DNA of 64,000 nucleotides from Azolla caroliniana (Eukaryota > Plantae > Polypodiophyta). The DNA is taken from positions 13,206,001 through 13,270,000 of the forward strand of contig JBHGNT010000018.1 of assembly GCA_043228905.1 (NCBI GenBank), written 5' to 3'. Below the pieces are notes generated by a model. That model ran no database searches. It was not told where the DNA came from and saw only the letters and a program-made list of their open reading frames with translations. This document shows positions 6,085 to 41,788 of the stretch, piece by piece; positions within the stretch are counted from its first letter, which is position 1; each line of letters starts with the position of its first letter. A program made the translations under genes and the position numbers.

Positions 6085-6325
6085 GTTCGGTTTCGGTTCG
6101 GTTCGGTTTTTTGGCCTTGAAACCAAACCAAACCACTTATTAAGAAAAAAAACCCAACCAAACCGTTTGAACATTTTGAAGCCATTTAAACCAAACCATT
6201 TTGAACCAAACCATTTAAGTCAAACCGTTTAGGAACAATTTAGAACCAAACCAAAGCATTTATGAAAAAATGAGAACCAAACCAAACCATTTACGAAAAA
6301 ACCAAAACCAAACCAAACCAAACCA
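6085..6325. repeat. hAT subterminal repeat array (ggttc / aaaccaaacc), transposase-3' end
   Basis: Dense run of ttcggtt and aaaccaaacc/aaaccg motifs directly inside the TIR, like the transposase-binding subterminal repeats of Ac-type elements. Confidence 0.8.
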
Positions 6326-6978: not shown

Positions 6979-9025
6979 TTATCTCCCATGATTATCACGT
7001 AACATGTAATCTATTACCTCGTCTTCACCAACAAGATCATCTAGATTAAATTTTAGTTCTTCATAAGCCATGTGAAAGTTATCTGTTATCTGAACATGCA
7101 TCCATGATCGAATACACATTTCGGCCTTGAATGTGCATGAATGTAGTTTGATCCTATCATCAAAGGTCATTTTTGTTGCTGAATTTGCCTCTTCAATAGG
7201 TACTGATGATGCTAGTATAGCAAGGTAATCACATGCCATCCTATACAGTTGTGGCATTGCAGATTTATTATCATGCCACCCTTGTAAGGGATCCTTGTCT
7301 ATGCTAGCTAAAGGAAGTCTTATGAACTGCTCAATTTCTGATCGTGAATCAGAAACAAGACTTTTATTGTGTACACCCATTAACCTCCAAATTTTAGAGT
7401 TATTATCAATAGGTTGTATTGTGGTTGAAGGTGGCTCAACACCACTCGAGAATGAGTGGTAATGGGACTCAATCATGCCTTCAACCAGCTTAATATCCAA
7501 CTCTCTTTCGATATGGTCATTTGGAATAGGCAATCTATAAAGGAATGAAAAATATTATTAAAATCAAATAAAATATCAGAAAGCATGAAGACAATTGTAA
7601 AACTTAAAGGAAAGTATTACCTAGGATCAAGAAACATTGCAATGCGTGATGGAATAGACTTTAACGATTCTTGATACTTAATTAAATATTGTAAGCAATT
7701 CTCAAACGCTTTTTGAAGCACCTCTTGTGTGAATCTAGATGATCCCGAAAGTGAAGAATCTAGAAACTGATTACAATGATTAAGTAAACAATTATAAGCT
7801 AGTGATGCTAGTGATAATGTAGGATATATTGATCCTCCTAGAAAGGTAGAAACCTCTGCAGGTGTTTCTAACCATTCCTCCATAGCATGTATGTGACTCC
7901 AATCTTCTACGGTCAAGACATAACCATTGAAATCACTTGAAATTGTTAGATCTGAAATTGTAAAATTCAATATAACTCTATCCTTGATAGCTTGCCTAAA
8001 CATCTCCAAAGAAGAATTCCATCTTGTAACAACATCAAGCCTTGGAGGTTCCTTTTCATGATGTTCAACCATCATAGCATACTTCCTATGAACTTCCCTT
8101 CGAACCTTGCTAGATCTAATAGTTTGGAGCGTTGTTCTCAACTTTTCCTTTGAGGGTGAGATAATCTCTAATGCTGACTTGATGCCCAATTGAAAAGTGT
8201 GCACCATACACCTTAACATGTGTGAGGGAGCTAAAATTTCCTTACCATGTTCATTTTGTAACAACATGCTCAATTCCTTTGCAGCCAATTGTGCATCACT
8301 AGCTCCATCAAAAATTGTAGTTAATAATCGACTTGAAATATTAAAAGATCCAAGTCGATAAAAGAGGGCATGTGCACAACATTTCCTTGATCCAACACTT
8401 GGAAATACATGCACAAAATCCAATAGCAATGAAGTGTCACTGAGTAGAAGCCCTTTAGACTACTATTTGACCATGAACCATCAAAAGTAATAGAAAATCT
8501 TGATTGACTTTTTGATAACAAATCTATCTCTTGATGGCACAACACCACATACATTTCTAAGATGGAACGTTTAATCATGTGCCTTGTCTTCATCTGATAT
8601 CCAGGTACAAGATGGTGTACGAACTCTTTAAATGCATCTGATTCCACATGTGCATGGGGCAAAGTTCCCTTGACAATATACTTCATGACAAAACAATCAA
8701 TTTTCTTCTCTAAAACACGAGATACTCTAGTAGACTCTATAGAAGATTGAATAATCTTTGAAATACCTGAATTTTGATTTGGTTCGTTTGATAGATGATG
8801 CTTTTCCATTAAATGCTTAGTTATAGTACTTGTGGATGTTGTTGAAGACCAACAAACATGGCAATGATGGCATCGTCGTCGAGGTGTGCCATTATCCATA
8901 TAAGATATGATGTGAGCATCTGTCCATGATGTACGTTGCCTTTTTCTTGACATGCTTGTTTGCCCATGGCTAACATTAATTGATGATGAGTCCATTGTTG
9001 CATGAGTTTGAGAAGATGACTCCAT
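6979..9025 (-). pseudogene. hAT (Ac-like) transposase with BED zinc finger and C-terminal dimerisation domain; frameshifted
   Basis: BED finger W..H...CHHC...HLMEKH; FSITFDG(S)W; RCMVHTFQL (CxxH); DVVTRWNS; YPTLS; AMFLDPR; WHDNKSAMPQLYRMACDYLAILASSVPIE. GT-AG intron 7620-7535 joins in frame. A deletion/frameshift at ~8430 lies between VTLH and LLDF. Splice acceptor tttatag at 9038-9039, just upstream of the ATG. Confidence 0.92.
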
Positions 9026-9653: not shown

Positions 9654-12600
9654 TGTAAAGAATCAAGAGATGGATTCTTGTGAAGCGGAAGAGATATGAG
9701 TTATGTGTGTGTATGATAGAGAGTGAGTGAGTGAGAGAGACAAGGAATACGACATAGAGAATACGCAAGGTAAAAGTATATTAACAAAGGAGAAAGACTC
9801 AACTAAATACAAGGTGGGAGGAGAGTGCTTTATATAGTCACCCTCTCTCTTCATTAACTACAAGACTCATGGAGCATGGGGAATGTGAAAGCTCATAAGT
9901 TATGTGTCATAGAATATGATTCTATGACTCATACTAAATGCTAGAATACAAAGAGGTGACATAATGGTGACTCTTGACCGTTGGAGTGTCTATTCACTCT
10001 CAAGGTGAGTTCACACACTAGACCAAGTTGAGCTTGATTCTCAACATGCCCCCTGAAGCTCAAGCCGGGTCGGTTTCAGAAGGTATCCGAAATCCGCTTC
10101 GACTCGCGTTCCGAAGTCCGTGTCGACTCGCATTTATGTGGAGTTGCGGAATCCGTGCTCCAGCTTGCGTTGTGCGTAGTTGCGAAGTCTGTGCTTCGGC
10201 TTGCGTCTTCCTTCGCGGCTTTGCGCGGTAGACTGACTCTTCGTGGCTTCGTTGCGTGGTTGTGTAATCCACGCGTTATTGTGTAGTGTGCTCGGTTTGC
10301 GGAATCCACGCGTTATTGCGTAATGTCTTCAGTACTCCCCCTCAAGCTTGGCAGCTCAGGGATCGTCAATTCGAGATTGGTCATGAATTGCCATAGCTTG
10401 TCGGCTCCTAAGGCTTTAGTGAAGATGTCGGCCGTTTGAAGATTGGTGCTAATATGTTGTAGGTCGACATTGCCAGCTAGAACGCGCTCTCGGATGAAGT
10501 GATAGTGCACTTCGATGTGCTTTGTCCGCGCGCGGAACACCGGGTTCCGAGCCAGATAGATACTGCTCATGTTGTCGCAGTAAAGGGAAGTTGGATCCTT
10601 GATGGGTACGCCCAGATCCTTGAGTATTCTTTTGAGCCATACAGCTTCACATGCGGCCACTACCGCGCCCCTGTATTCTGCCTCTGTGCTCGAAAGAGCG
10701 ACGGTTGGTTGCTTTTTGCTGCTCCAGGATATTGCTCCGTTGCCGAGGGAGAAAACAAATACGGAGGTTGATCTTCTATCATCTTTGTAGCCGACCCAAT
10801 CGACGTATGTGTACCCCTCGAGTCGTATTGGCATCGCGGTCTTGTAGAGGATGCCACAATCCATTGTGCCTCTCATGTATCGTAGAACTCGCTTAACGCA
10901 ATCCAAGTGAGTATCACGCGGTGTTTGCATGAATTGACTAAGGAGACCGATTGGATAACTGAGATCAGGTCAAGTGATCGTGAGGTAGATGAGACTCCCG
11001 ATGAGTTGTCGATACTGAGTCGGCTCACACGCTTTGGTGCCAGAGTTCGCATCTAGTTTGAGATTACGATCGAGCGGGGTTGCCATGGATTTGCACTTAG
11101 CCATACCGAACTTGTATAACAAGTTGAGGATGTAGTGTTGTTGAGAGATCATGATTCCGGCCGGAGTCCGAATTACCTCGATGCCGAGGAAGTAGTGGAG
11201 CTCCTTCATGTCCGTCATCTCGAACTTGTCGGAAAGGAGGGATTTGACCTTACTGATTTCGACGAGATGCTCACCTCCAATGACTAGGTCATCCACATAT
11301 AAGATGATGACGATCGGACTAGCGGAATCACTTCGTATGTAGAGGTAGTTGTCCGATTTTGACATACGGAAGCCGATTTGATGAAGATATGGCGTTATCT
11401 TCGAATGCCAAGCATGCGGTGCTTGCTTGAGGCCGTAGAGAGGCTTCTTGAGTCGGCATACAGCTTTCGGATGGGTGCTCGAGTTGAAGCTGGGTAGTTG
11501 TATCATGTACACCTCCTCTTCTAATTCGCCTTGTAGAAAGGCGTTCTTGACGTCCATTTGATGGAGGTGCCACCCTTTCGCCACGCCAAGCGCAATTACG
11601 GTCCGTACCGTCATCATCTTTGCCACCGAGGCAAAGGTTTCTTCGTAGTGGACGCCATGCGTCTGAGCGTATCCTTTCGCTATGAGTCACGCTTTGTAGC
11701 GGTTGATGGAACCGTCAGCGTTGTACTTCACTTTGTAAATCCATCTGCATCCAATCGCTTTTTTGTGCGGTGAGGTGGGAACGAGATCCCATGTCTCGTT
11801 CTTGCGTAGTGCCTGCATCTCCTTGTTCATGGCTTCAATCCATCGCGGATCCTTGGCTGCTTAGGAAAAAGTTTCCGGCTCGCGTACTGTCGCCACCTTC
11901 ATCATAAAGGCGTAATGGTACGCCATATAATCGTTGTAGCTGAATCGGCTTATGGGGTTCTTTTCACGGGTGGATCGGCGGAGCTTTTCATTTGCAAAGA
12001 TGAGGGCTTTCTTAGCTCCGATTGGTACCTCGAAACCGCCGAACTCATTGTCGAGTGAGTGAGTCGACTCATCATCGTCGAAGCGATCGTCTTCGTATTC
12101 CGCCATTTTCGACTTGCCTTTGTCCATCTTTAGGCTAGGCCGTGATGTGCTTTGATCGCTCAAAGGCTCTTGTGGTCCGCTCAGTCGGGTCGTGATCGGA
12201 CTTTCTTCGAACATGCGTGTAAGGCAATCTTTATTCTGTATCTCTTGTTCGGCAGATTCCGGGTCGAGCTGAGTCGGAGTCGGAGTTGTCTCTGGTGCGT
12301 ACCAGGATACGGACTCGTCAAAAACGACGTCTCGACTTACTCGAGATTTTCGAGTTGAAGGGTTGTAGCACTTGTAGGTCCCTTTTGCTCCAGTGAGTAT
12401 CCTACAAGGATACATTTCTCCAACTTCGGGTCAAGCTTTTGACGCTTCTCGTCGGGGATGTGCACGTACGCTATCGCGCCGAATATCCGGGTGTGCGATA
12501 AGTCCGGCTTCTTTCCAAAGTATTTTTTGGGTGGAGGGACCTCGTGCATGCCGAATGTTGTGCATCAATTCATTAGGTAGACGGCTGTATTTGCATCTTC

Positions 12601-15183
12601 GGCCCAATATGACTTGGGCATATGCTTCTCGTTCATCATGGCCCACGCTACTTCGAGGATGTGCCGATTTTTGCACTCGGCTACTCCGTTTTGTTGCGGA
12701 GTGTGTCGGCAAGTGAATTCTTGCCAAATTCCTTCCTTTCGGAGATACGCCGTGAAATCGTCCGAGAAGTACTCCTTGCCGCCATCTGATCGAAGACAAC
12801 GTACATGTCGGCCCGTGGCTTTCTCGACTTCATTCTTGAATGTTTGGAAGTGTCCGAACACTTCGCTCTTTTGCTGAATCGGATAGATCCAAGTGTGCCT
12901 AGAAAAGTCGTCAATGAAGAACACGTAATATCGGCATCTGCCGAATGTAGCCGTCTGCACCGGTCCCCATACGTCGGAATGGACTACGTCGAGTAGACCT
13001 TTGCTCACGTTCCGCTCTTTCGGGAATGGGTGTCGGTGTTGCTTGCCGAATTGGCACGCTTCGCATACACCTTCAATCTCCTTCTCTTTGAATGTCGAGA
13101 GTCCGATGACGACTCTATTCGATTTCATTGCTTTGAGTTTGTTGAGATTGATGTGGCCGATTCACTTGTGCCATAACTCTATGTCGGAGTCGGATTTCGT
13201 GCTTTTCGCGAACATGGCGGATTTCATCTCGTGTGAATCGAGAATGAACATCCGGCCCTCTCTTCTTCCGCGTGTGATGATTCGGCCTTCGTTTTCGATG
13301 AAACACCCTTCTTGGTCGAATCGTACTTGCATCCCTTGCTCAACAATTTGGCCGACCGAGACCAAATTCTTCGTGATGGTGGGAACATGCAAGACATTTT
13401 TAATGTATGTTTGCTTACCTCTTTCGCCGAATGGAACATTGCCGATGTGCCGAATCGGGTGCATAGTATCATCTCCGGTTTCGACATAACCGGGTCGCTC
13501 CGGCTCTCGAAGTTCGAGAAACCATTCTTTATGGGATGTCATATGGTTTGAGGCTCCGGATTCAACAAACCATATGTCCTCCGAATTGAGGGCACTAGTT
13601 GAGGTAGAGGCCGACATAGAGTTTGCTCTATGTTTCATCATGAACATTCCGCCATGGTCAGAGTTGTGTGCATACATTCCGCCACAATCTTTGTAGTCGA
13701 AGTTGTTCTCGTACATTCCGCTATAATCTTTGTAGTCGGAATTGTGTCCATAATTCGTGAGTTGTTGGCTTGTGGAAGCCGATTCACGCATCTTCTTTTG
13801 GCACTCTTCTTCGTGGTAGCCGAGCTTTCCACAATATCCGCATTCGGTTGCGTTTTGACGGCTTGGGCCGGAGTGGAAGCTCCCCCTTCTTGCGAAGGTT
13901 CCTCGTTGGCTTCCGTTTTACGGCCGAAATTGGGAGTTGTTATCGTAGGTCGGACCTCATCCGCCTTGTCCTTGGCCGAATCGGCCTCTCAACCATCTGT
14001 GTCCTCTTCCTTCGTTCGAGTGCGTGTAGAGCATGTGGCCTTCCGACTCATTTCTCCTTGTACGCATGTGGTTTTCTTCGACCAATAGCATTGATTGGAG
14101 CTCGAAGAAGGAGGGAGATTTCTCCCGTGCTAGAACGGCGGTTCACATCGCGCCGAACCGTGGTGCGAGGCCGCCGAGGCATATTTGAACCATCTCATCA
14201 TCATCGATATTTACGCTTATTGAGCCAAGCGAATTGCAAAGCTCCTTGATCTTCGAGGTGTATGTCGTGATGGACATGTCCCTTTGTTGAATGTTGTTCA
14301 ACTCTTGGCGGAGTTGAAGCCTTCTTACGGTTGTGTTCGCCGCGAAAATCTTTCGTAGATTTTCCCATGCCTCCTTCGGCGTCTTGGCTTCACGAATGTA
14401 GCCAAGAATGTGATCGTGAACACATGTCACCAAGCAATACATCACGCGGCTTGCGGCTTGCTCCCATGTCGCGTATTTGGGAGCCGCTTCGGCGGGTCGG
14501 TCTTCATGTGCTCCTTTGATGTAGCTCCAATAGCCTTGTCCGACAAGGTATTGGTGCATCTTGTACTCCCAAGATGCGAAGTTGTTTCGATCCAACTTCT
14601 CGGTAGGGAGAGCGCTCCCCATTTGAGTATTCATTATGTCGATTCTTCTTCTTCTTCTCTCTTCGAATGCGAGCTATGTAGCGAAGCTACGATAGCGATG
14701 CGCCGATCCTTGGTCATTGGCGTGGAGCACCACACACGACCACGATGAGGCGAATGGGCTAGATCGAGCTACCAAATCGCTCTGATACCATGTAAAGAAT
14801 CAAGAGACGGATTCTTGTGAAGCGGAAGAGATATGAGTTATGTGTGTGTATGATAGAGAGAGAGTGAGTGAGAGAGACAAGGAATACGACACAGAGAATA
14901 AGCAAGGTAAAAGTATATTAACAAAGGAGAAAGACTCAACTAAATACAAGGTGGGAGGAGGGTGCTTTATATAGTCACCCTCTCTTTTCATTAACTACAA
15001 GACTCATGGAGCATGGGGAATGTGAAAGCTCATAAGTTATGTGTCATAGAATATGATTCTATGACTCATACTAAATGCGAGAATACAAAGAGGTGACATA
15101 GTGGTGACTCTTGACCGTTGGAGTGTCTATTCACTCTCAAGGTGAGTTCACACACTAGACCAAGTTGAGCTTGATTCTCAACA
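9654..15183 (-). mobile_element. Full-length Ty1/copia element nested in the hAT (LTRs 9654-10046 and 14791-15183)
   Basis: 393-bp LTRs differing at about 8 sites by eye. TSD aatat (9649-9653 / 15184-15188). PBS tggtatcagagc (14779-14790, tRNA-iMet) and PPT after 10046. gag-PR-INT-RT-RH order. Confidence 0.95.
10313..14634 (-). pseudogene. Copia gag-pol polyprotein, disrupted by several stops and frameshifts
   Basis: ORF pieces: gag (LDRNNFASW), protease (WFVESGASNHM), integrase (VHSDVWGP, RSDGGKEY, QQNGVAE), RT (QMDVKNAFL, LYVDDL), RNase H (ADIFTKAL). Confidence 0.92.
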
Positions 15184-22254: not shown

Positions 22255-22336
22255 AAACGATTTGATTTGGTTTTTGTTTTATATAAACGGTTCGGGTCAG
22301 CTTCTTTGTCTTGAAATCGAACCGTGCCCATTGTTA
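22255..22336. mobile_element. Orphan internal hAT terminus (TIR plus subterminal motifs)
   Basis: aaccgtgcccattgtta (22320-22336) matches the right TIR aaccgggcccattgcta at 15/17, preceded by tttggtttt/aaacggttcggg motifs. Confidence 0.7.
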
Positions 22337-23297
22337 CTCTTGAGCACATACTTTGCCTACAATAGTGGTGGTTCTTCCTGGAAATACTCACCACCTTCCT
22401 CGATTCTCTACATAGCTTAGGAACTAATTCTAGTGCTTGGGCAAATGTCATATTCACTTTTTTCTCTTTCAAATAATTCAACAATGAATATGACTCTTGA
22501 TGCCTAATTGGTAATCCTAGATAGTTATTCTCCTTGTTTATTCTCGAGGTTTCTTTTCTTGCTTATTCCTAGGTTTTATTGTGTTCTCTGCTACACCTTT
22601 AATTTGATTATGAAACCTGATTTAGATCCTCAAACCTTCTTCTTGGTCCTCCATCTGAGCTCTCCTTCCTATTAAAACATCATATGACTCTCCATTTAAT
22701 GACATTCCCACGGGTTATAACTTATATCTATTGACTCCCTTACTTCATCATTCTTATTAACTCCCATTAAATTAATATTATGAGCATTTACTTGATTTTG
22801 TGGCCTCTGCTCTTATGCTCGGTGTAGAATCGGGGCAATACCTCCTTCTCGCGTGGGATGTCTGCAATTTGGTGAAATGCTCCCACGCTCAAAACAATTT
22901 TAACACTACAGAGACATTTTGTTTCCCAATACATAATGGCCTTCAGGTATTGGCCTCCACCAAAAAGTTTTGACCCAATCCGTCAGTCAAATATTGGGTC
23001 AGGAAAAGGGTCACATGGAGATTTCCATGACAACTCCTTCATGGAAACCTCCACATTAGGGAGCCCGGAGGAGCATGAATGAATGCTTGATGAACAACAA
23101 AGAAGAAGAGAGATGGCTTATGAAGCATGAACCTAAACCAAATCCACATAAATTTTTCCTCAAACCTAAACCATCCACTATTGTCCTATCAATGAGACTT
23201 TGAAATGATGGTGGATATGCAATTTATCATAGTGTCTACATATGGTATGGGTGTTCCACCCCCATTGTTGTTTGATAGCTATGATCCACAACTAATT

Positions 23298-23690
23298 TGT
23301 TGGGAAAACTGGTCCCTCCGATGGGAGGAACACAAGTTGGAGAGAAGAGTAAGTCGAATGGGTCGTCAGCATCCCAATTCCCAATTCAGTCGAGGCCGAA
23401 AAAACGAATAATAATCGATTTGACTAGTTGAATCGGCCAAAGTCGACCCAAGGCTATATTTGTAAATAGTCATATATGAATATGAGTATAAATATATTTT
23501 GGGCAAGTGGTTAGGTATGATGAATTATTAGTGGCATTAGAGTGTAACTAGTGTGAGAAAGAGAGTGAGAGAGAGTTGAAACTCTGTAACCGTCAGTAGA
23601 CGAAGAAGAGCTTGAGTACCTGAATTAATTTTTCATTTTTCTATTCCGTTGAGTTCCCATGTCTCTTTAGAATTTTCTCATAGATTTGTT
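23298..23690 (+). repeat. Degenerate copia LTR remnant (family of B and the young copia)
   Basis: Begins tgttgggaaaactggtccctccgatggg and contains ggctatatttgtaaatag, as in the LTRs at 4195 and 30274. The 3' boundary is uncertain. Confidence 0.6.
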
Positions 23691-24224
23691 ATCAAACCTC
23701 AGCTGAAGTTTCCCAATCATAACTGCAATAAATTCCCCATTGTCCTAGGGGGCTCTGCAATGAATTTGTGAACAGATTGGGTATGTTGACATGTGTTCTA
23801 ATTGACACCATTTTGATCCCTCCCCGATGTCCTTGATAAATCCTCAAGACCAAGTTCATATGCAATAACATAGTCGTAACCACCTTTTAATGAGGCTTTT
23901 GGTGGTTTTAAAGGTTGAGACTCTTGCTCCTTTAATAACTTTGTCCAACTTTTTATCCTAAACCCATCATCTTGTACTCTGGTCTACATGTTAGAAAAGA
24001 TGAACAACCACCACAGGCTTGGTACCACAGCCATTATAACCCTGGAACCTCTTCTGATATCCTGGCTGGATCACTTCTTCGATACTCAAGAAATGTAAGA
24101 GGGAAGGGATAACTTTAAGAGGGACTCTTGATAGAGAAAACACTGATGTCCTTCGCCATGTTATGGTGCATAGAGGAGCATTTGCAAAATTTCTCATGAA
24201 CCTGTAAAGCATACAATGTCACCA

Positions 24225-26390
24225 CTAAATATTGAGACATGCTTGAGCATCTCCCTGTCTCAGAAGCACACAATTGACAATCTGCTCTGCACAATTCAAG
24301 TTTCCTGTGTTCCTACAAGAACTTAAAATTGAATTCCAAACTGGATGATTAGGATATAATGGCATCTTCTCAATGATTGTTGATGCCTTGTCAAATTGTC
24401 CTGAATGACCAAGAAGATTAACCATCCAGGTCTGATGTTCGATACACGGAATAATGCCATATTCCTTGTTCATGGCCTCGAAGAATGTCTCACTCTGACT
24501 GAACAAACCCAGACGACTGCATGCATTGAAGACAACAATAAAGGTCACTGGATCAGGCTTTATTCCGTCACCTAGCATTCTGTCAAAAACAGTTAAAAGA
24601 TCTTCACATTCTCCAATCTGGGAATATCCTGAAATTAGTGAATTCCATAATGCAACATCTCGAACTGGAAGATTGCTGAACACAGACTTTGCCATGCCCA
24701 GATAACCACATTTGACATACATGTCGACCAACGTGCTGGCCATGACTATATCACCTTCTAAAAAACCCTTCCTTGCAATTTCATTATGGATCTCAAGGCC
24801 TTTTCTTATTGTTCCCATAATGGCACAAGCTTTCAAGCCGCAAATATATGTAAGATGATCTGGCAGAACACCTTGATCTTGCATTACTTCAAAATACTTC
24901 ATTGTTTCCTCTCCATGCCCCTTATCTGCATATCCAGCAATCAAAACATTCCACGAGACTACATCTCTCAATTGAAGCTTATCAAACACCTCTTGTGCTT
25001 TACTCATCACACCACATTTGGCATACATATCAACCAAGGTATTGCCAACAGTCAGATCTTTACCCAATAACCCTATCCTTTCAACCTCGGCATGTATTTT
25101 TTCACCTTTGTCTTTGTCTCTTAAACTGCTACAAGCCTTCAAACATGACACGAATGTGACAGAATTTGGGGAGATACCATTATGCTGCATGTGTTCAAAA
25201 TACTTGAGTGCTTCTTCACCGTGGCCATGGTCAGCACATCCTGTGATAATTGTGGTCCATAAAACAGCATCTCGTACAGGAAGGTTGTCAAACAATTCCT
25301 TTGCTTCCTCCAGAAACCCGCATTTCACATACATGTCAACTAAGGAACTCTGAAGAAAAAGGTTTCCTTGAAAAGGTTCAATTCCAGCGTGTATCTCTCT
25401 GCCCTTGATTACAGCCCCTATGCTGCCACATGCCTTCAAACCATAAAGAAATATGATGCTATCTTGTGAGATACCCTCAAGTTTCATCTGTTCAAAACAT
25501 TTGAGTGCTTTTTCACTATAGCCATGTTCAGAATATCCTGCAATTATTGCAGTCCATGAGACAATATCACGAGCACCAGGAAGCTCATCAAAGACTTGTT
25601 CAGCTATGGAAAACAGGGCACATTTGGCATACATATCAACTAAGGTACTTCCAATGATATATTCTACCAATAATCCCTTTCTCACCACTTCAGCATGTAT
25701 TTCTTGGCCCTTATCAACTTTTCCAAGATTTCCACAAGCCTTCAGACTCCAAACAAATGTGAAAGAGTCTGGAAGGGGGCCCACTACTTGCATTTCTTCA
25801 TAATAATCAAGTGCCTTTCCAGGCATTCCTTGTTCTACATATCCTGCAATCAAAGTGTTCCATGTGAACCTGTTCCGTACGGGAATTTTGCTAAACACAT
25901 CATGTGCTTTTGCAAGTGCCCCCCATTTCACATACATCTCCACCAAAGCACTGCCAACAAGATGGTTGTGTTGGAGAAAACCCATTCTTGCCATTTCTGC
26001 ATGTATTTCCTGGCCTTCATTCATGGGTCCAGAGTCACCACAAGCTTTCACGCAGCATACAAATGTAACAGCGTTAGGAGAGACACCTTTGAGACACATC
26101 TGTCTCAAACACCCAAGGGCTTCTTTTGCTTGCATATGCTCAACATAACCTGCAATGAGTGCTGTCCATGCAACAACGTTGGGAGCCCGAATCTTTGTAA
26201 ACACTTCATGAGCCCTAGAAAGCAAGCCACACTTGGCATACATATCAATCAAGGCGCTACTAATGAAAAGATTGGTTTCCAGAAGCCCAATTCGGGCAAC
26301 CTCTTCATGTATTTCACCACCTCTTTTTGCATCCTTCAGCTTGGCACAATCTTTCAGAGAAGCTACGAAAGCATAGCCAGGGCGAGACAT
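24225..26390 (-). CDS. PLS-class pentatricopeptide repeat protein (putative organellar RNA-editing specificity factor), 721 aa, ending in a short E-like motif, no DYW
   Basis: Uninterrupted ORF with six P-type motifs (VVAWTALI, RFTWNTLI, IVSWTAII, AVLWTTII, VVSWNVLI, VALWNSLI) alternating with L (TFVCCVKAC) and S (LVDMYAKCG) motifs. Ends with L2/S2 and VWNSILSSCR. Confidence 0.95.
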   Translation of the reverse strand: MSRPGYAFVASLKDCAKLKDAKRGGEIHEEVARIGLLETNLFISSALIDMYAKCGLLSRAHEVFTKIRAPNVVAWTALIAGYVEHMQAKEALGCLRQMCLKGVSPNAVTFVCCVKACGDSGPMNEGQEIHAEMARMGFLQHNHLVGSALVEMYVKWGALAKAHDVFSKIPVRNRFTWNTLIAGYVEQGMPGKALDYYEEMQVVGPLPDSFTFVWSLKACGNLGKVDKGQEIHAEVVRKGLLVEYIIGSTLVDMYAKCALFSIAEQVFDELPGARDIVSWTAIIAGYSEHGYSEKALKCFEQMKLEGISQDSIIFLYGLKACGSIGAVIKGREIHAGIEPFQGNLFLQSSLVDMYVKCGFLEEAKELFDNLPVRDAVLWTTIITGCADHGHGEEALKYFEHMQHNGISPNSVTFVSCLKACSSLRDKDKGEKIHAEVERIGLLGKDLTVGNTLVDMYAKCGVMSKAQEVFDKLQLRDVVSWNVLIAGYADKGHGEETMKYFEVMQDQGVLPDHLTYICGLKACAIMGTIRKGLEIHNEIARKGFLEGDIVMASTLVDMYVKCGYLGMAKSVFSNLPVRDVALWNSLISGYSQIGECEDLLTVFDRMLGDGIKPDPVTFIVVFNACSRLGLFSQSETFFEAMNKEYGIIPCIEHQTWMVNLLGHSGQFDKASTIIEKMPLYPNHPVWNSILSSCRNTGNLNCAEQIVNCVLLRQGDAQACLNI

Positions 26391-26719
26391 ATTGAGCTTG
26401 ACATCAACGCTGTGGAAACATCATCTATGCATCCTAAATGGATGACATGAGAGATTCATGCTTGGCGGTAATAGTGCTAAAAAAACTGAAAAAAACGTGC
26501 TTTTGGGTGGGAACGACTGATCCAATAGGATAATGAAGACTTTTCTTTTGTAAAAAAAACATCAAATTAAAGTAAGAAAAGAAAAACGGTCTTCTTCTAG
26601 TTTTTTTTATCTTATCGGCTTAACTTAATATGGCGCAAAAGGAGGGATTACAGATACATAGTCCATAACAACTTTCCGCCACAAAGGAAAAGGCCAATCA
26701 AGGAGGTTGGATTTCATGG

Positions 26720-26945
26720 CGTAAAAAACGCCCCTCAAATACAAGTTTCTTCTGTGCGGTGAATTGACCTTCTTCTTCTTCTTCTTCTTCTCTGTCTCTG
26801 TCTTTCATCGCGCCGCCTTTCTTCCACGCAGATATGGAATGCAGAAAACGCCGCTCAAAAACAAGTTCCTTCGGGCCGGTAAATTGACCTTCTTCTTCTT
26901 CTTCTTCTTCTTCTTCTTCTCTGTCTCTCTCCTTCATCGCGCCAA
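26720..26945. repeat. ~120-bp tandem duplication containing (CTT)n, upstream of the PPR gene
   Basis: aaaacgcc.ctcaaa.acaagtt...aattgacc(ttc)n tctgtctct..ttcatcgcgcc occurs twice with a period of about 120. Confidence 0.8.
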
Positions 26946-26982: not shown

Positions 26983-27258
26983 CATAGTATGAAGTTTGAA
27001 CCATACTTACCATACGCACATTCGCATTCGAGAATGATCAATCGTTCAAGTACATATAGTAAACACCCTCGAAGTATGGTAAATACCATACTTTTGTATT
27101 CATTATCTATTATAAGGTAATTTTTACCTTAACTTTTGTAAGAAAGTTATGGTAAAAAGTATAAAAAACATAAGAATGTTTGGAGAACATACGCATTCGT
27201 TTACATTCGTATGAAACAGAATATATTGCCAATGCATTCGAGTATATTACGTACTATG
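26983..27258. mobile_element. Short MITE of the same family as 1921-2665
   Basis: Termini catagtatg / cgtactatg. Shares accatac..accatacg, cattcgag, aaacaccctc and atggtaaataccatactttt with 1921-2030. No clean TSD. Confidence 0.7.
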
Positions 27259-30273: not shown

Positions 30274-33200
30274 TGTTGGGATTTCGGTCCCTCCGGATGG
30301 GATGTCCGGAGATGAATGACGGCAAGCCCGGTTGCGGTTACGGAACCGGATGATGAAGACCCCGGTTACGGAACCGGATGATGAAGACCCCGGTTACGGA
30401 GCCGGATGATGAAGACCCCGGTTACGGAACCGGATGATGAAGACCCCGGTTACGGAACCGGATGATGAATGTACCCGGAGAGAGATCCGGATGCGGAGAC
30501 ATATTTGTGAATATGTTTGCCAAGAGCCCTTGAGGCTATATTTGTAAATAGCCCGAAAGTCATATGTGTATAAATATGACTTAGGGCAAACAGTTTTATG
30601 TCGTTGCTCATTTTTCATGAGAAGTGAGAGCAGCCGAGAGAGAGAGTGAGAGACGAAGAGGTCGTTGCCTCTGTGTAATACCGCCGCCTGTGGCGAGGAC
30701 AGCGAGCTCAAGGTTGTTGCCTTGTAGCCTCACCATTGTACATCTCTGTGTATAGTGATAGTTGGAGTTAGAGGACTCCCGTGGTTTTTTCCCATTTAGG
30801 GTTTTCCACGTAAACATCCTGTGTGCTCTTCTCTCTGTTGTTCTTCGTGCATTCTTGTATTTCCCGTTTTCTGCGAATCGATCCTGTTCCTCGGTTGTGG
30901 CCGAGCACGGAATTGCAACAAATTGGTATCAGAGCGACGGTAACACAGAAAATGGAAGGCGCCGGTAGTGGGCCTCCGGGCATGATGGTGCTGAATGCGC
31001 AGAATTACGCCGACTGGAAGATCAAGATGGAGGATCTTCTGATTGTTCGGGACCTGTACGAACCGATTGACAGGTCGGAAATACCGAAGGGGGTACTTGA
31101 GTCGGAGTGGAAGCTCCTGAACCGGAAAGCCGTAGCGACGATCCGACAATATGTCGATGTAAGCGTTCTACAGCATGTGGCGAACGACACCAACGCATAT
31201 GAGATGTGGCGGAAGCTGTCGGGCCTCTATGAGAGGAAGAATGCGTTGAACCGGACCTCCCTGATGAGGAAGATAGTGAACCTCAAGTACCGGGACGACG
31301 AGAGTATGGTGGAACACGTAAGCACGTTCATGGGATTCGTGAACCAGCTTGCGGCGATCAAGTTCCCGTTGGAGGATGCAATGCAAGCCATCATCCTGAT
31401 GTGTACATTGCCGGACAGCTGGGAGAACTTGGTGGTGACTCTCAGCACCTCCTGCACCGAAGATAACTTGTCTCTACAAACGGTAAAGACAAGTATTTTG
31501 AACGAAGAAGCGCGTCGGAGAGATAAAGAACCGGTCTCCGACTCGAAGGTGCTGCTTACCGAATCGGAACGGGGAAGACAGTGGAACCGGAGTCCGCAAA
31601 GACGGGAGAAGTTGGGGACCCGGTCGCAGTCAAGAGGAAGGCCAACATGCTTCCACTGTGGGAAGCCGGGGCACTTCCGGAAGAATTGTCGGCATTACCG
31701 AAAGGACAACGGAGCCGACGACACCGATTCGAAGAAGTCACCGGAGAGAAACGGTGCATACCGGGGAGCCACGGACCGGAGAGGTCCGGATCGGCGAGGG
31801 CAGGACCGGAAAGGAACAACGGCACTCGCGGCAAGTGAGGAAGAAATCATGCTCATCACCGAAGAATGTGAACTAAACGTAGCCGGCGATGAGACGACCT
31901 GGGTGGTCGATTCCGGAGCATCGTTCCACCTGACCCCGGAGAGAAGATACTTCTCATCCTACACAGCCGGTGAGCATGGCTGTGTTCGGATGGGGAATGA
32001 AGGTACGTGCCGGATTGCCGGCATAGGAGACGTGTGGTTGACAACCCCGACCGGATGCAAAATGCTGCTGAAGGATGTTCGACACGTTCCGGAGGTTCGA
32101 TTGAACCTGATTTCGGCCGGGAGGCTAGACGATGAAGGCTACACGGGTAGCATCCGGAACGGTGTCATGAAGTTCAGCAAAGGGAGCCTGATAGTGGCTC
32201 GGGCCCGGAAGGTCAACACCCTGTACCTGATGAATTCCCGGCTCTGTCCGGAGGAGCTGAACGTGGCAGCCGACACTGCCGGTGAGCTGTGGCACAAGAG
32301 ACTGTGCCACATGAGTGAGAAGGGGATGAAGAGGCTTGCAGAAGACAACCTTATTCCAGTGAAGCATGTGCACCTGGAGAAGTGCACCGACTGCCTGGCC
32401 GGTAAGCAAAACCGGACCTCCTTCCACTCAAGGCCACCGATGAGACGTAGCGCACCATTGGAGCTGGTGCACACTGATGTGTGTCAGGTAGAAACGAAGT
32501 CACATGGCGGAGCCCAGTACTTTGTGACATTCATTGATGACCACAGCCGGAAGCTGTGGACGGCACCGTTGAAGACAAAGGACCAAGTGTTGTCCGTCTT
32601 CAAAGAACTCCACGCGAGAGTGGAAAGGGAATCCGGCAAGAAGCTGAAAGCGATACGAGCGGATAACGGAGGGGAATACCGGGGGCAGTTCCAGGAGTAC
32701 TGTCGCTCGAAGGGAATCCGGCTCGAGTTTACTGTGCCGAAGACGCCGGAACTGAACGGGCTGGCCGAGAGGATGAACCGGACCATAATGGAGAGGGTCC
32801 GGAGTATGCTGGCGCATGCGAAATTACCCAAGGGGTTTTGGGCTGAGGCGATGTCGACGGCGACATACGTGATAAACAGATCACCCTCAGTACCTTTGGA
32901 CGGAGACACGCCGCAGAGAGTGTGGACCGGTAGGGAAGTATCCTACCGGCATCTGAAGGTGTTCGGGTGTCTCGCATACGTGCATGTGGCAAAGGACCGG
33001 AGAGGAAAGCTAGATCCAAAGACCCGGCCATGCATATTCCTCGGTTACGGTGACGACGAGTTCGGCTACCGAGTATGGGACCCGGTCGACAAGAAGATAT
33101 TCAGGAGTCGAGACATCATCTTCATGGAGGACAAGACACTCGCCGACTGGGAGTCGGAGAAGAAGATGAAGAGCTCAAAGTCGACCGGTGAGGATCAACT

Positions 33201-35657
33201 CTACGAGGAGCAGTCCCGACCGGCAAGGGACCGGTTAGCACTCGAGGATCCGGCCGAAGACGGTGAAGAAACAGAACCGGCCGAAGAAGATGAAAATGAT
33301 ACCGGAACCGGCCCCGATCCCGAAATGGATTCCGATGAAGAAGAAGAATCGGAAGAACCGGTTACCGAAGCTCCCGAACAGAGATATCCTCTAAGAGAGA
33401 GAAGGGCCCCCCGGAGATTTCCGGAACCAGAGCACGTGCTGCTAACAGACGAGGGGGAGCCGGAAAGTTTTGAAGAAGCAAAACATGACACCCAGAGCCG
33501 CAGGTGGTTGAGTGCCATGCAGGACGAGATGGATTCCCTGCATGAGAATCACACATATGAACTTGTGGAGTTGCCGAAAGGAAAGCGGGCACTTCGAAAC
33601 AAGTGGGTGTTCAAGCTGAAACCGGGAGATGCCGGAAACCCCCCGAGATACAAAGCCAGGATCGTGGTGAAGGGGTTTCAGCAAAAGAAGGGCGTCGACT
33701 TCGACGAGATATTTGCCCCGGTAGTGAAGATGACCTCCATCCGGACGGTGCTGAGCATAGCAGCAAGCATGGACCTCGAGGTAGAACAGATGGACGTGAA
33801 GACGGCATTCCTTCACGGTGACCTCGAAGAAGAGATCTACATGCAGCAACCGGAAGGATTCGAGAAGAAAGGGAAGGAGCACCTGGTATGCCGGTTGAAG
33901 AAGAGCCTTTACGGACTGAAGCAGGCTCCCCGGCAATGGTACCGGAAGTTCGACTCCTTCATGACCGACGAAGGGTACCACAAAACGCAGTCTGATCACT
34001 GCGTGTTTGTGAAGAAGTTTGAAGGAGGAGACTCTCTAATACTCCTCCTGTACGTGGACGACATGTTGATCGTCGGACGGGACCAGGTCAAGATACGGAT
34101 GCTGAAGAAGGCTCTTCACCGAACCTTCTCAATGAAGGACTTGGGCCCGGCGAGACAAATACTAGGGATGCACATCATCCGGAACCGGAGCAAGAAGCAG
34201 TTGTGGCTGTCACAGGAAAAGTACGTGACAAAGGTGCTTAAACGGTTCAACATGTCGGAAGCAAGACCGGTCGGATCGACCCTCCCGGCAAACTGCAAGT
34301 TGTCCAGCAAGCAAAGCCCCAAGACAAAGGCTGAGAAGGAGGACATGATGAAAGTACCATATGCCTCTGCTGTCGGAAGCTTGATGTACGCAATGGTGTG
34401 TACAAGACCAGACATTGGATACGCAGTCGGAGTGGTGAGCCGGTACATGAGCAATCCCGGCAAAGAGCATTGGAACGCGGTCAAGTGGATACTCCGATAC
34501 CTGAAGGGCACGGCAAACGTGTGCCTCCGATTCGGCTCCGGTAAGCCTGAACTCGACGGCTTCACCGATTCGGATATGTCGGCTGATGCAGATACCAGCC
34601 GGTCCACATCAGGGTATGTGATGACCTATGCAGGGGGAGCCGTTTCGTGGCAGTCGAGGCTGCAGAAGACGGTTGCGTTGTCAACCACGGAGGCGGAGTA
34701 CATGGCAGCTGTTGAAGCCGGCAAGGAAATAATATGGATGAAGGACTTCATTAGAGAGCTCGGTATCCAGCAGGAGGAGTACCGACTCTACTGCGACAGT
34801 CAGAGTGCCATCCACCTTGCGAAGAATGCGGCTTATCACTCCCGGACGAAGCACATCCAGCGAAGATATCACTGGATCCGGGAAAGGATAGAAGACAAGG
34901 AGTTCGAGCTGACGAAGGTCCACACGGACGAGAACGGGTCAGATATGCTGACCAAGGTGCTCACACCCGACAAGCTGGAAGCATGCCGGAAGAGGATCGG
35001 ACTGGAGAGACATCCCATGCCGAAGTGAAGGGGGAGTTTGTTGGGATTTCGGTCCCTCCGGATGGGATGTCCGGAGATGAATGACGGCAAGCCCGGTTGC
35101 GGTTACGGAACCGGATGATGAAGACCCCGGTTACGGAGCCGGATGATGAAGACCCCGGTTACGGAACCGGATGATGAAGACCCCGGTTACGGAACCGGAT
35201 GATGAATGTACCCGGAGAGAGATCCGGATGCGGAGACATATTTGTGAATATGTTTGCCAAGAGCCCTTGAGGCTATATTTGTAAATAGCCCGAAAGTCAT
35301 ATGTGTATAAATATGACTTAGGGCAAACAGTTTTATGTCGTTGCTCATTTTTCATGAGAAGTGAGAGCAGCCGAGAGAGAGAGTGAGAGACGAAGAGGTC
35401 GTTGCCTCTGTGTAATACCGCCGCCTGTGGCGAGGACAGCGAGCTCAAGGTTGTTGCCTTGTAGCCTCACCATTGTACATCTCTGTGTATAGTGATAGTT
35501 GGAGTTAGAGGACTCCCGTGGTTTTTTCCCATTTAGGGTTTTCCACGTAAACATCCTGTGTGCTCTTCTCTCTGTTGTTCTTCGTGCATTCTTGTATTTC
35601 CCGTTTTCTGCGAATCGATCCTGTTCCTCGGTTGTGGCCGAGCACGGAATTGCAACA
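30274..35657 (+). mobile_element. Very young, intact Ty1/copia element (LTRs 30274-30920 and 35039-35657)
   Basis: TSD ggatt (30269-30273 / 35658-35662). PBS tggtatcagagc and PPT agggggag. LTRs appear identical apart from one 28-bp repeat unit. Single intact ORF. Confidence 0.97.
30952..35028 (+). CDS. Copia gag-pol polyprotein (~1358 aa from the first ATG after the PBS)
   Basis: gag with zinc knuckle CFHCGKPGHFRKNC, protease WVVDSGAS, integrase HTD...IDD...DNGGEY...NGLAER, RT QMDVKTAFL/YVDD, RNase H TDSD...AEY...SDMLTK. No stops. Confidence 0.96.
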   Translation: MEGAGSGPPGMMVLNAQNYADWKIKMEDLLIVRDLYEPIDRSEIPKGVLESEWKLLNRKAVATIRQYVDVSVLQHVANDTNAYEMWRKLSGLYERKNALNRTSLMRKIVNLKYRDDESMVEHVSTFMGFVNQLAAIKFPLEDAMQAIILMCTLPDSWENLVVTLSTSCTEDNLSLQTVKTSILNEEARRRDKEPVSDSKVLLTESERGRQWNRSPQRREKLGTRSQSRGRPTCFHCGKPGHFRKNCRHYRKDNGADDTDSKKSPERNGAYRGATDRRGPDRRGQDRKGTTALAASEEEIMLITEECELNVAGDETTWVVDSGASFHLTPERRYFSSYTAGEHGCVRMGNEGTCRIAGIGDVWLTTPTGCKMLLKDVRHVPEVRLNLISAGRLDDEGYTGSIRNGVMKFSKGSLIVARARKVNTLYLMNSRLCPEELNVAADTAGELWHKRLCHMSEKGMKRLAEDNLIPVKHVHLEKCTDCLAGKQNRTSFHSRPPMRRSAPLELVHTDVCQVETKSHGGAQYFVTFIDDHSRKLWTAPLKTKDQVLSVFKELHARVERESGKKLKAIRADNGGEYRGQFQEYCRSKGIRLEFTVPKTPELNGLAERMNRTIMERVRSMLAHAKLPKGFWAEAMSTATYVINRSPSVPLDGDTPQRVWTGREVSYRHLKVFGCLAYVHVAKDRRGKLDPKTRPCIFLGYGDDEFGYRVWDPVDKKIFRSRDIIFMEDKTLADWESEKKMKSSKSTGEDQLYEEQSRPARDRLALEDPAEDGEETEPAEEDENDTGTGPDPEMDSDEEEESEEPVTEAPEQRYPLRERRAPRRFPEPEHVLLTDEGEPESFEEAKHDTQSRRWLSAMQDEMDSLHENHTYELVELPKGKRALRNKWVFKLKPGDAGNPPRYKARIVVKGFQQKKGVDFDEIFAPVVKMTSIRTVLSIAASMDLEVEQMDVKTAFLHGDLEEEIYMQQPEGFEKKGKEHLVCRLKKSLYGLKQAPRQWYRKFDSFMTDEGYHKTQSDHCVFVKKFEGGDSLILLLYVDDMLIVGRDQVKIRMLKKALHRTFSMKDLGPARQILGMHIIRNRSKKQLWLSQEKYVTKVLKRFNMSEARPVGSTLPANCKLSSKQSPKTKAEKEDMMKVPYASAVGSLMYAMVCTRPDIGYAVGVVSRYMSNPGKEHWNAVKWILRYLKGTANVCLRFGSGKPELDGFTDSDMSADADTSRSTSGYVMTYAGGAVSWQSRLQKTVALSTTEAEYMAAVEAGKEIIWMKDFIRELGIQQEEYRLYCDSQSAIHLAKNAAYHSRTKHIQRRYHWIRERIEDKEFELTKVHTDENGSDMLTKVLTPDKLEACRKRIGLERHPMPK

Positions 35658-38640: not shown

Positions 38641-40299
38641 ACCGGGCCCATTGCTAACCACAGCTGGAAGTTGTGGGTCTCCATGTTGAAGACGAAGGAC
38701 CAGGTATTTTCTGTCTTCAAGGAGCTTCATGCGAGAGTCAAGAGAGAAACCAGCCGGAAGTTAAAGGCAGTTCAAGACGACAACCGAGGTGAATACCGAG
38801 GGTAGTTCGGGAAGTGCTACCGGTCGAAGGGAATTCTGCTCAAATACACCGTGTTGAAGATGCCAAAGCTGAATGAGCTGGCCAAGAGGATGAACTGGAC
38901 CATTATGGTGAGGGTCTGAAGTATGCTTGCACATGCTGAGTTGTCCAAGAAGTTTTGGGTTGAGGCGCTGATGACAATGACGTATGTGATAAACATATCA
39001 CCCTCAGCACCCTTGGACGAAGATATACCATAGAGAGTGTGGACTAGCAAGGACGTTTCATATTGGCATTTGAAGGTGTTCGGTTGTCTTGCCTATGTAC
39101 ATATCGCAAAGGACAAACGGGGAAAACTAGACCCAGAAACTCGGAGATGACGAATTCGGCTACCGACTGTGGGACTTAATCGACAAGAAGGTCGTTCGAA
39201 GCCGAGACATAGTCTTCATGGATAAAAAGACTATTGTTGACTGGGTGTTAGAGAAGATCACATCTTCCCGAACAGTCAGAAGTCTACAACCGACTAAAGA
39301 ACATGGAGAGTCAATTGAATTCAAGTCCACAGTTGGGAGTCGGAGGTCAGTCGGGTGTCAGAGTCAGACACAGAGTCGGATCCAACGAAGACGAAGAAGG
39401 ACCAACTCCGACTCGGATGAAGAACTAACTAAAGAAGTTGAAGAGGAGCCGACTGTATTGGCCAGGGAGAGAAGATATCCCCTTAGAGAGAGAAGGCCCC
39501 CCAAAGATTTCTGAATGAAGAGAATGTATTGCTGATCGACGAAGGGGAGTCGAAGAGCTTCGAGGAAGCAAAGAGGGACACCCACAACCGCAAGTGGTTA
39601 AGTTCCATGGAGGACGAAATGGATTCCCTGCATGAGAACCACACATACGAATTGACAGAGCTACCGAAAGGAAAGAAGGCGCTTTGAAACAAGTGGGTAT
39701 ACAAGTTGAAACCGAGAGACGCCAGAAATCCACCAAGGTATAAAGCCGGCAACGTGATGAAGGGATTCTAGCAGAAGAAAGGAGTAGATTTCAATGAGAT
39801 CTTTGCCCCGGTAGTGAAGATGACATCCATCCGGATAGTGTTGAGCATAGCGGCAAGCATGGACCTCGAAGTCGAGTAATTAGATGTCAAGATTGCCTTC
39901 TTGCACGATGACCCTGAGAAGGACATCTACATGCAGCAACCGAAAGGATTCATCAGGAAAGGGAAGGAGAACCTAGTGTGCTGGTTGAAGAAGAGCTTAT
40001 ATGGACTGAAGCAATATCCCTGGCAATGGTACTGAAAGTTCGACTGCTTTATGAAGGACCACGGGTAGCACAAGACGTAGGCCGACCACAACGTGTTCGT
40101 GAAGAAGTTTGACGGAGGAGACTTCCTAATACTCTTGCTGTATGTGGACGACCTGTTGATCGTCGGACAAGACCATATCAAAATCCGGATACTTAAGAAG
40201 GCCTTGAGCAAGTCTTTCTCGATGAAAGATATGGGTCCAGCAAGACAGATTTTGGCGATGCACGAAGAAGCTATTGTGGTTGTCACAAGTGAAGTACGT

Positions 40300-40732: not shown

Positions 40733-40763
<31 letters not shown>

Positions 40764-41732: not shown

Positions 41733-41788
<56 letters not shown>

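What the first reader, a model, noticed from the sequence alone, without database searches (positions are those of the whole stretch)
24225..26390. Intact PLS-class PPR (RNA-editing-factor type) riding inside the transposon
The 2166-bp ORF has no disablements, although the carrier's transposase is frameshifted, its TSD and TIRs have accumulated mismatches, and the host copia is riddled with stops. That contrast suggests purifying selection after the move (inference). PLS-PPR families are known to be greatly expanded in ferns and other heavily editing lineages, usually attributed to retroposition or tandem duplication. DNA-transposon carriage would be an additional route for spreading editing-specificity factors. 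The protein ends in a short E-like motif without DYW, so it would need a deaminase in trans.
Basis: partly seen in the sequence, partly recalled or inferred. Interest (0 to 1): 0.8.

Follow-up and report, generated by a model that had tools for sequence, protein, structure and literature searches.

The report
PPR gene copy inside composite hAT
An unbroken 721-codon reading frame for an RNA-editing-type PPR protein lies inside a 32.6-kb cut-and-paste (hAT) transposon in a fern genome, but it lacks the usual front end, most of its closest relatives are broken, and continued selection is not shown, so it is best read as an ordinary case of transposon gene capture.

Summary
Window 24225-26390 (-) is an uninterrupted 721-codon PLS-class PPR ORF. 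It ends after the E1 motif, with 7 residues of E2 and no DYW.

It lies inside a real hAT-bounded insertion, 6071-38656. The TIRs match 12/13 and the 8-bp TSD matches 7/8. Two other copia copies in the window run straight across the insertion point.

The caveat is that the ORF starts inside a PPR motif with no leader. Fern homologs carry a median of 257 more N-terminal residues.

A third hAT terminus at 22336 means the carrier looks like a composite (macrotransposon-like) element. The PPR lies in the DNA between the inner and outer right ends.

The selection inference is weak:
- The transposase has only one lesion, a ~34-nt deletion, so there is no real contrast with the PPR.
- Changes on the window's own lineage are 5 synonymous to 5 replacement (P 0.05-0.13).
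- At least 7 of the 11 close relatives found on public contigs are broken, and several share the same lesions.

This is a new member of a known kind (Pack-type or macrotransposon capture by hAT). First readers of this scan noted three other hAT elements with PPR fragments in this genome; I did not check them.

The parts
24225..26390 (-). Uninterrupted 721-codon PLS-class PPR ORF: L-S-(P-L-S)x5-P2-L2-S2-E1 plus 7 aa of E2, with no DYW and no N-terminal leader
26391..26940 (-). Degenerate 5' region. An in-frame TGA lies 10 codons upstream of the ATG. There is a possible acceptor TTTCCACAG at about 26412. A tandem duplication (26725-26791 / 26845-26911) sits next to a (GAA)n run and carries weak relics of an S-motif end ('LVFE.RFL..SAW').
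   Evidence: each relic hit is non-significant on its own
23114..24224 (-). 3' flank. Stretches 24105-24224 and 23114-23297 are shared with public relatives L001 and L002. Stretch 23298-24104 is specific to the window. Homology ends at 23114.
6063..6090 (+). Left TSD copy (6063-6070, ACCACAGG) and left hAT TIR (from 6071, TAGCGATGGGCCC...), followed by subterminal GGTTCGG/AAACC repeats up to about 6400
38644..38664 (-). Right hAT TIR (ends at 38656; reverse complement TAGCAATGGGCCC) and right TSD copy (38657-38664, ACCACAGC)
22324..22336 (-). Internal third hAT terminus of right-end type (reverse complement TAACAATGGGCAC, 10/13 to the left TIR). Its outer flank CTCTTGAG matches no TSD.
6979..9025 (-). 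hAT transposase gene. It is open except for one ~34-nt frameshifting deletion at about 8418-8428. It has a probable GT..AG intron at about 7534-7619 and a C-terminal hAT dimerisation domain.
9654..15183 (-). Nested copia with a perfect 5-bp TSD (AATAT), LTRs 98% identical, and a broken pol
30274..35657 (+). Young nested copia with a perfect 5-bp TSD (GGATT), LTRs about 100% identical, and an open 1401-aa polyprotein ORF. It sits inside an older truncated minus-strand copia fragment (about 29323-30268 and 35663-37078).
4647..6070 (+). Host copia, left part (gag-protease and the start of integrase). It has a ~330-bp deletion 33 bp left of the hAT insertion point.
38665..40263 (+). Host copia, right part (integrase core and reverse transcriptase). 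It is contiguous with the left part once the hAT and one TSD copy are removed.

Best explanation
The ORF is a copy of the 3' 2.2 kb of a fern PLS-class PPR gene of the DYW-less clade that ends after E1. It sits as passenger DNA in a composite hAT element.

The proposed history is as follows. An autonomous hAT (left end 6071, transposase, own right end at 22336) lay next to a stretch of ordinary genomic DNA. That stretch held the PPR copy and copia debris, and it ended at a second hAT right end (38656). Transposase used the two outer ends, and the whole unit moved as one piece into the integrase region of a copia, making the 8-bp duplication ACCACAGC. At the time it was about 21.7 kb. Two copias later nested inside it and brought it to 32.6 kb.

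The insertion, the three termini and the nesting order are shown. The composite origin, and the PPR having arrived with the unit, are inferred.

The PPR copy has no leader peptide and a decayed 5' region, and most of its closest known relatives are broken. Its open frame is therefore most simply explained by youth plus inherited constraint from a functional ancestor. Selection after the move is not needed. Whether it is expressed or still works is unknown.
For: Insertion:
- TIRs match 12/13 and the TSD matches 7/8.
- The joined host flanks align without a gap to two other copia copies that carry the target octamer once.

Composite structure:
- Only three credible termini exist in the window, in the order L, R', R. 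No left-type partner for R' exists other than 6071.
- The outer right end matches the left end better than the inner one does (12/13 against 10/13).
- The interior holds a truncated copia fragment that is not a clean nested insertion.
- Both complete copias have perfect TSDs, so they are separate insertions.
- Precedents exist: mobilisation of neighbouring insertions as one Pack-TYPE element (PMC8903248), and 10.3-kb and 28-kb Ac macrotransposons (PMC9910405).

PPR status:
- There is no leader, and an in-frame stop lies upstream.
- The 150 nt upstream show no similarity to P-motif DNA. No PDF-type upstream exon was found.
- Eleven close relatives were found. Seven contigs are broken, four of them by a shared frameshift at codon ~174 and three by a shared stop at 670.
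- The transposase has one lesion against none in the PPR.
- The window lineage shows 5S:5N, P 0.05-0.13.
Against: - Homology with relatives L001 and L002 stops at 23114, 778 bp from the inner terminus. The simple model predicts collinearity up to that terminus.
- No left end was found for a second element.
- No second copy of the composite, and no donor locus, could be searched for.
- Some signal of constraint exists. Window against L001 gives dN/dS 0.19. No indels occur in 713-1118 coding bp, while the flanks are full of them. In the PPR-array part of the window lineage the count is 5S:1N.
- All 13 P and S motifs that I read by eye (the first S, five P/S pairs, P2 and S2) keep canonical specificity residues.
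- Under pure neutrality at 1.0-1.4% lineage divergence, the chance of an open frame is only 0.0004-0.16, depending on indel rate.
Confidence: 0.55

Rival explanations
1. The PPR is a working, DYW-less editing-specificity factor that has stayed under purifying selection since the hAT moved it. hAT carriage is then a route by which such factors spread in ferns.
For: - The frame is open over 721 codons with no indels against relatives.
- dN/dS is 0.19-0.63 against relatives, and the window lineage shows 5S:1N within the array.
- The specificity positions are canonical.
- The C-terminal end is normal for its fern clade.
- Chance survival is only 0.0004-0.16 if the copy has been neutral for its whole lineage.
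- First-reader notes report three other hAT elements with PPR fragments in this genome (unchecked).
Against: - There is no targeting leader and the 5' region is decayed.
- Window-lineage changes are not significantly biased, P 0.05-0.13.
- Four of the five replacements on that lineage fall in the last 22 codons.
- The private replacement rate is no lower than in broken relatives.
- At least seven of the eleven close relatives are broken.
- The transposase is almost as intact as the PPR.
- The constraint signal may date from before the capture.
Confidence: 0.2
2. The hAT did not carry the PPR. The PPR segment (from at least 26420 down to 23114) entered an already resident hAT later, by segmental duplication, repair-mediated copying or another mobile element.
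For: - The segment shared with relatives has a sharp boundary at 23114, not at a hAT terminus.
- The hAT interior has clearly accepted later insertions.
- The region 23001-23300 is rich in subterminal-like or telomere-like motifs, which might mark another element.
Against: - No TSD, poly(A), TIR or Helitron-like end is seen around the PPR.
- The 5' boundary is unknown.
- The three-terminus layout and the truncated copia are explained without this extra event.
Confidence: 0.2
3. The 32.6-kb interval is not one insertion. The outer termini belong to unrelated events and the TSD match is chance.
For: - The host copia lacks about 330 bp close to the junction.
- The TSD and TIRs are imperfect.
Against: - The deletion lies 33 bp away from the junction, and the junction itself is seamless in two reference copias.
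- A 7/8 TSD at fixed ends has a chance of about 4e-4. A 12/13 inverted TIR has about 0.04 expected per window (my arithmetic).
Confidence: 0.03

Closest known systems
Ac macrotransposons and composite insertions of maize (Huang and Dooner 2008; Wang et al. 2022; PMC9910405)
   Same: Both are hAT superfamily elements with outer 5' and 3' termini of separate elements used together. Both carry tens of kb of intervening host DNA, show an 8-bp TSD, and retain an internal terminus.
   Different: This case is in a fern and is an old, fixed event. Movement is inferred from a paralogous empty site, not seen genetically. No left end of a second element was found. The shared homology of the cargo stops 778 bp from the inner terminus.
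Pack-TYPE transposons including Pack-hAT, under the neighbouring-insertion capture model (Catoni et al. 2019; PMC8903248)
   Same: Host gene sequence lies between TIRs, and the architecture fits two same-orientation insertions mobilised as one with a mutated inner TIR.
   Different: Pack-TYPE elements are usually small, non-autonomous and carry short fragments. This one also carries a transposase gene and a 2.2-kb open ORF. Amplification of this element was not shown.
Fern PLS-class PPR proteins that end after E1 (Adiantum capillus-veneris and Ceratopteris richardii models, 43-51% identity)
   Same: Both have a PLS triplet array with a P2-L2-S2-E1 end, no DYW, and the same C-terminal stopping point.
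   Different: This copy lacks the N-terminal leader and the first motifs that nearly all of those proteins have. No identical or near-identical annotated gene was found.
PPR family expansion by retroposition (O'Toole et al. 2008, as cited in PMC3814199)
   Same: Both involve an intronless PPR copy at a new locus.
   Different: No poly(A) tract or target-site duplication flanks the ORF. The copy shares at least 1.1 kb of non-coding 3' flank with its relatives, which a retrocopy would not.

Membership tests
PLS-class PPR protein (editing-factor type) | Tandem P, L and S motif triplets | tested here: met
   Pfam gives PPR_2 at 3e-85 and PPR at 4.5e-82. A 306-nt DNA periodicity appears six times. 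Manual parse into 20 motifs.
PLS-class PPR protein (editing-factor type) | C-terminal P2-L2-S2-E1-E2 extension | tested here: inconclusive
   P2, L2, S2 and E1 are present by inspection and by alignment to homologs. E2 is cut after 7 residues. Pfam E_motif gave no hit at E 0.01. The same ending is the rule in its fern clade.
PLS-class PPR protein (editing-factor type) | DYW cytidine deaminase domain | tested here: not met
   No PF14432 hit, and I saw no DYW-like sequence in the three frames translated downstream of the stop.
PLS-class PPR protein (editing-factor type) | N-terminal organelle-targeting sequence | tested here: not met
   The ORF starts 2-3 residues before an L motif, and acidic residues fall within the first 30 aa. 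There is an in-frame stop 10 codons upstream. Homologs have a median of 257 extra N-terminal residues. No upstream exon was found.
PLS-class PPR protein (editing-factor type) | Site-specific RNA editing activity, or a matching organellar target | not testable with these tools
   No organelle genome or editing map of this fern is at hand.
hAT superfamily DNA transposon | 8-bp target-site duplication | tested here: met
   ACCACAGG / ACCACAGC, 7 of 8. The target octamer occurs once in two uninterrupted copia copies.
hAT superfamily DNA transposon | Short terminal inverted repeats with subterminal repeats | tested here: met
   12/13 match. GGTTCGG/AAACC motif density peaks at both ends.
hAT superfamily DNA transposon | hAT transposase with a C-terminal dimerisation domain | tested here: met
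   PF05699 at 3.9e-13. Homologs at 87-89% identity span the gene, which carries one frameshifting deletion.
Composite hAT (macrotransposon or Pack-TYPE by neighbouring insertions) | An extra internal terminus of the same family, with host DNA between the inner and outer ends | tested here: met
   The terminus at 22324-22336 shares the TIR core and the GGTTCG motif. The PPR and non-hAT DNA lie between it and 38656.
Composite hAT (macrotransposon or Pack-TYPE by neighbouring insertions) | A donor locus, or further copies of the same composite | not testable with these tools
The single metagenome scan gave two relatives without hAT ends.
Processed retrocopy | Poly(A) tail and flanking target-site duplication | tested here: not met
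   No A-run lies downstream of the stop. The non-coding 3' flank is shared with relatives.

The most novel reading that the evidence does not exclude
A hAT macrotransposon moved a still-selected, DYW-less PPR specificity factor to a new locus, where it is expressed from acquired 5' sequence. Together with the other hAT-borne PPR fragments noted in this genome, this would make cut-and-paste transposons a recurrent route of PLS-PPR family growth in hyper-editing ferns, alongside retroposition and tandem duplication.
Probability: 0.12. Interest if true: 0.65.

Novelty: new member of a known kind. Interest (0 to 1): 0.35.

Why it matters
Large PLS-PPR families in ferns track their heavy organellar RNA editing, and how those families grow is only partly understood. 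This locus is a clean, checkable example of a DNA transposon relocating a long open PPR sequence. The proof is a paralogous empty site, an 8-bp duplication and three termini.

It also preserves the intermediate architecture that the 'neighbouring insertions' and macrotransposon models of gene capture predict, in a lineage far from maize. On present evidence it does not show that a working editing factor was spread this way. Its value is as a well-documented capture event and a candidate for expression and copy-number tests.

Tried and rejected
- Truncated DYW gene: rejected. I saw no E2 or DYW remnant in the three frames translated downstream, and the whole fern clade ends at this point.
- Retrocopy: rejected. 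No poly(A) tract or TSD was found, and the non-coding flank is shared with relatives.
- Hidden upstream exon with a leader or an OSB-type PDF motif, a lead from earlier notes on this genome. tblastn of 119 homolog N-termini gave only weak hits. No PDF tripeptide exon lies on the minus strand between 26391 and 38656. A plausible acceptor at about 26412 remains, so this is not excluded.
- Decayed P motif just upstream of the ATG: no DNA similarity, z about 0.
- Partner left terminus for the inner right end: none was found within 2 mismatches.
- Host copia discontinuity. An apparent 320-bp offset turned out to be a separate deletion 33 bp from the junction.
One metagenome scan gave only two DNA relatives.
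- Pfam on the transposase core: no hits even at E 10. A word search gave usable homologs instead.
- Search of the scan's own notes by sequence: blank.
- The large representative search, structure prediction and fold search were not used, because the protein family was never in doubt.

Full report
**The ORF**

Window 24225-26390 on the minus strand is a single 721-codon ORF with an ATG start. Pfam scores it as PPR throughout: PPR_2 at 3e-85 and PPR at 4.5e-82. The DNA shows six in-register copies of a 306-nt unit, the length of one P-L-S triplet.

I parse it as L-S-(P-L-S)x5-P2-L2-S2-E1, followed by 7 residues of E2 and a stop. Pfam finds no DYW or E-motif family in the ORF, and I saw no DYW-like sequence when I translated the three frames downstream.

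The best database hits are fern proteins from Adiantum capillus-veneris and Ceratopteris richardii, at 43-51% identity. Those proteins stop at the same place, with a median of 18 more residues. So the short ending is normal for this clade and is not a truncation.

All 13 P and S motifs that I read by eye keep canonical residues at the two specificity positions (T, S or N with D or N).

**What 'intact' hides**

- The ORF begins 2-3 residues before an L-type motif.
- An in-frame TGA lies 10 codons upstream.
- Of 119 homologs, 113 carry at least 21 more N-terminal residues; the median is 257. Those extra residues are a leader plus further motifs.
- The 150 nt upstream show no similarity to P-motif DNA.
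- N-termini of homologs find no upstream exon.
- No PDF-type exon of the kind earlier notes report for PPR genes of this genome lies upstream on this strand.
- Weak relics of an S-motif end sit 300-500 nt upstream, in a tandem duplication beside a (GAA)n run. This suggests the array once ran further 5'.
- A possible splice acceptor, TTTCCACAG, lies just after the upstream stop, so a distant 5' exon cannot be excluded.

**The carrier**

A left hAT TIR starts at 6071 and a right one ends at 38656; they match 12/13. Both are backed by GGTTCGG/AAACC subterminal repeats. They are flanked by ACCACAGG and ACCACAGC.

Both flanks are copia sequence. When the left flank is joined to the right flank minus one duplicate, the join aligns without a gap to two other copia copies in the window, and each of those has ACCACAGC once. 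The site encodes the integrase motif FVTFIDDHSRKLW. An apparent 320-bp offset in the host copia is a separate deletion 33 bp away from the junction.

The interval 6071-38656 is therefore one hAT-bounded insertion. Inside it are:
- a hAT transposase gene, 6979-9025 on the minus strand, with Dimer_Tnp_hAT at 3.9e-13;
- two complete copias with perfect 5-bp TSDs, AATAT and GGATT, whose LTRs are 98% and about 100% identical;
- a truncated older copia fragment;
- glyoxalase-like exons reported in another note;
- the PPR.

**Composite structure**

A third terminus of right-end type ends at 22336. Its reverse complement is TAACAATGGGCAC followed by GGTTCG. No other credible terminus exists in the window, and its outer flank shares no TSD with anything.

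The order is therefore left end, transposase, inner right end, PPR, outer right end. The outer right end matches the left end better than the inner one does (12/13 against 10/13).

This is the layout predicted when two neighbouring same-orientation insertions are mobilised through their outer ends (PMC8903248). It is also the layout of the 10.3-kb and 28-kb Ac macrotransposons of maize (PMC9910405). Without the two later copias the unit was about 21.7 kb.

Two points do not fit neatly. No left end of a second element is seen. And homology of the PPR locus with its public relatives stops at 23114, 778 bp short of the inner terminus.

**Relatives**

The exact protein is not in the collection. 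Close relatives, at 93-97% amino-acid identity, occur only as ORF fragments on short ENA metagenome contigs: P0014, P0121-P0126, P0197-P0199 and P0135.

- a shared frameshift at codon ~174 on four contigs;
- a shared stop at codon 670 on three contigs, counting L002;
- a private frameshift near codon 100 on one contig.

Three N-terminal fragments start at the same Met as the window copy, so the truncated 5' end is ancestral to this close group.

One metagenome scan returned DNA for two relatives, L001 and L002. Coding identity to the window is 97.3-97.9%, with no indels. The alignable flank is 92-97% identical, with many indels.

I could not tell whether these are paralogs in one genome or orthologs in related ferns.

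**Selection**

- Pairwise dN/dS is 0.63 (window against L002), 0.19 (window against L001) and 0.34 (L001 against L002).
- Assigning changes to lineages over 236 shared codons gives 5S:5N for the window, 6S:3N for L001, and 1S:7N including the stop for L002.
- Under mutation models with transition and CpG bias, the window's count has P 0.05-0.13 and L001's has P 0.005-0.02.
- Four of the window's five replacements fall in the last 22 codons.
- Across 708 columns the window has 10 private replacements (1.4 per 100), no fewer than the broken relatives.

So a constrained gene exists or existed in this group, but constraint on this copy since its move is not shown.

Homologs P0200 and P0201 align to the transposase in one frame down to 8429 and in another from 8417. 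Fifteen homolog residues correspond to only 11 nt of the window, which means one ~34-nt deletion. The rest of the gene is open, and the gap at 7534-7619 has GT..AG ends typical of an intron.

One lesion in about 2 kb against none in 2.17 kb is no contrast. The host copia is older than the insertion, so its decay is not informative.

Under strict neutrality at 1.0-1.4% lineage divergence, the chance that the PPR frame stays open is 0.0004-0.16, depending on the indel rate assumed. That leaves room for some past constraint but does not date it.

**Verdict**

The structural observation is right, and it is sharpened here by the empty-site proof, the composite architecture and the order of nesting.

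The functional inference is not established. The copy lacks a leader, most of its closest kin are dead, and its own lineage shows no significant excess of silent changes.

Gene capture by hAT elements and macrotransposons is already known. First-reader notes (unchecked) list three more hAT elements with PPR fragments in this genome. I rate this a new member of a known kind, of moderate interest.

Noticed in passing
window 6034-6037: The host copia lacks about 330 bp (the GAG-pre-integrase domain and the start of the integrase core) relative to two other copia copies. The gap lies 33 bp left of the hAT insertion point and is separate from it.
   Followed up: yes
window 23001-23300: This region has the highest density of GGTT[TC][AG]/AAACC-type motifs outside the two hAT ends. 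It could be a relic subterminal region of another hAT or degenerate telomere-like TTTAGGG repeats. It lies in the 3' flank shared with relatives L001 and L002.
   Followed up: partly
P0135 (ENA contig of 1426 bp): This PPR fragment has a 73-aa N-terminal extension of further motifs. It is only about 35-40% like the window over the first 50 or so residues, then about 97% identical, and it shares the codon-174 frameshift. It is either a recombinant paralog or a chimeric low-coverage assembly.
   Followed up: partly
window 27056-27216 and 1965-2633: A small dispersed repeat (81-85% identity, two blocks) lies upstream of the PPR and again near the window start. It may be a MITE.
   Followed up: no
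window 21684-21758 (-): A short stretch translating to TLVCIIGLCNKYNDLHQTISLH weakly resembles a PPR L motif (five homolog N-termini, E 0.04-0.6). It lies inside the autonomous part of the hAT.
   Followed up: partly
window 30272-30497 and 35037-35206: The LTRs of the young copia contain 28-bp tandem repeats whose copy number differs between the two LTRs.
   Followed up: no
window 40733-42253: Direct repeats of about 495 bp at 91% identity (40733-41226 and 41758-42253) interrupt the host copia's pol. They look like a small LTR-type (TRIM-like) insertion.
   Followed up: no
window 7534-7619 (-): The hAT transposase gene appears to have one short intron with GT..AG ends right after the conserved FLDPR motif.
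   Followed up: partly
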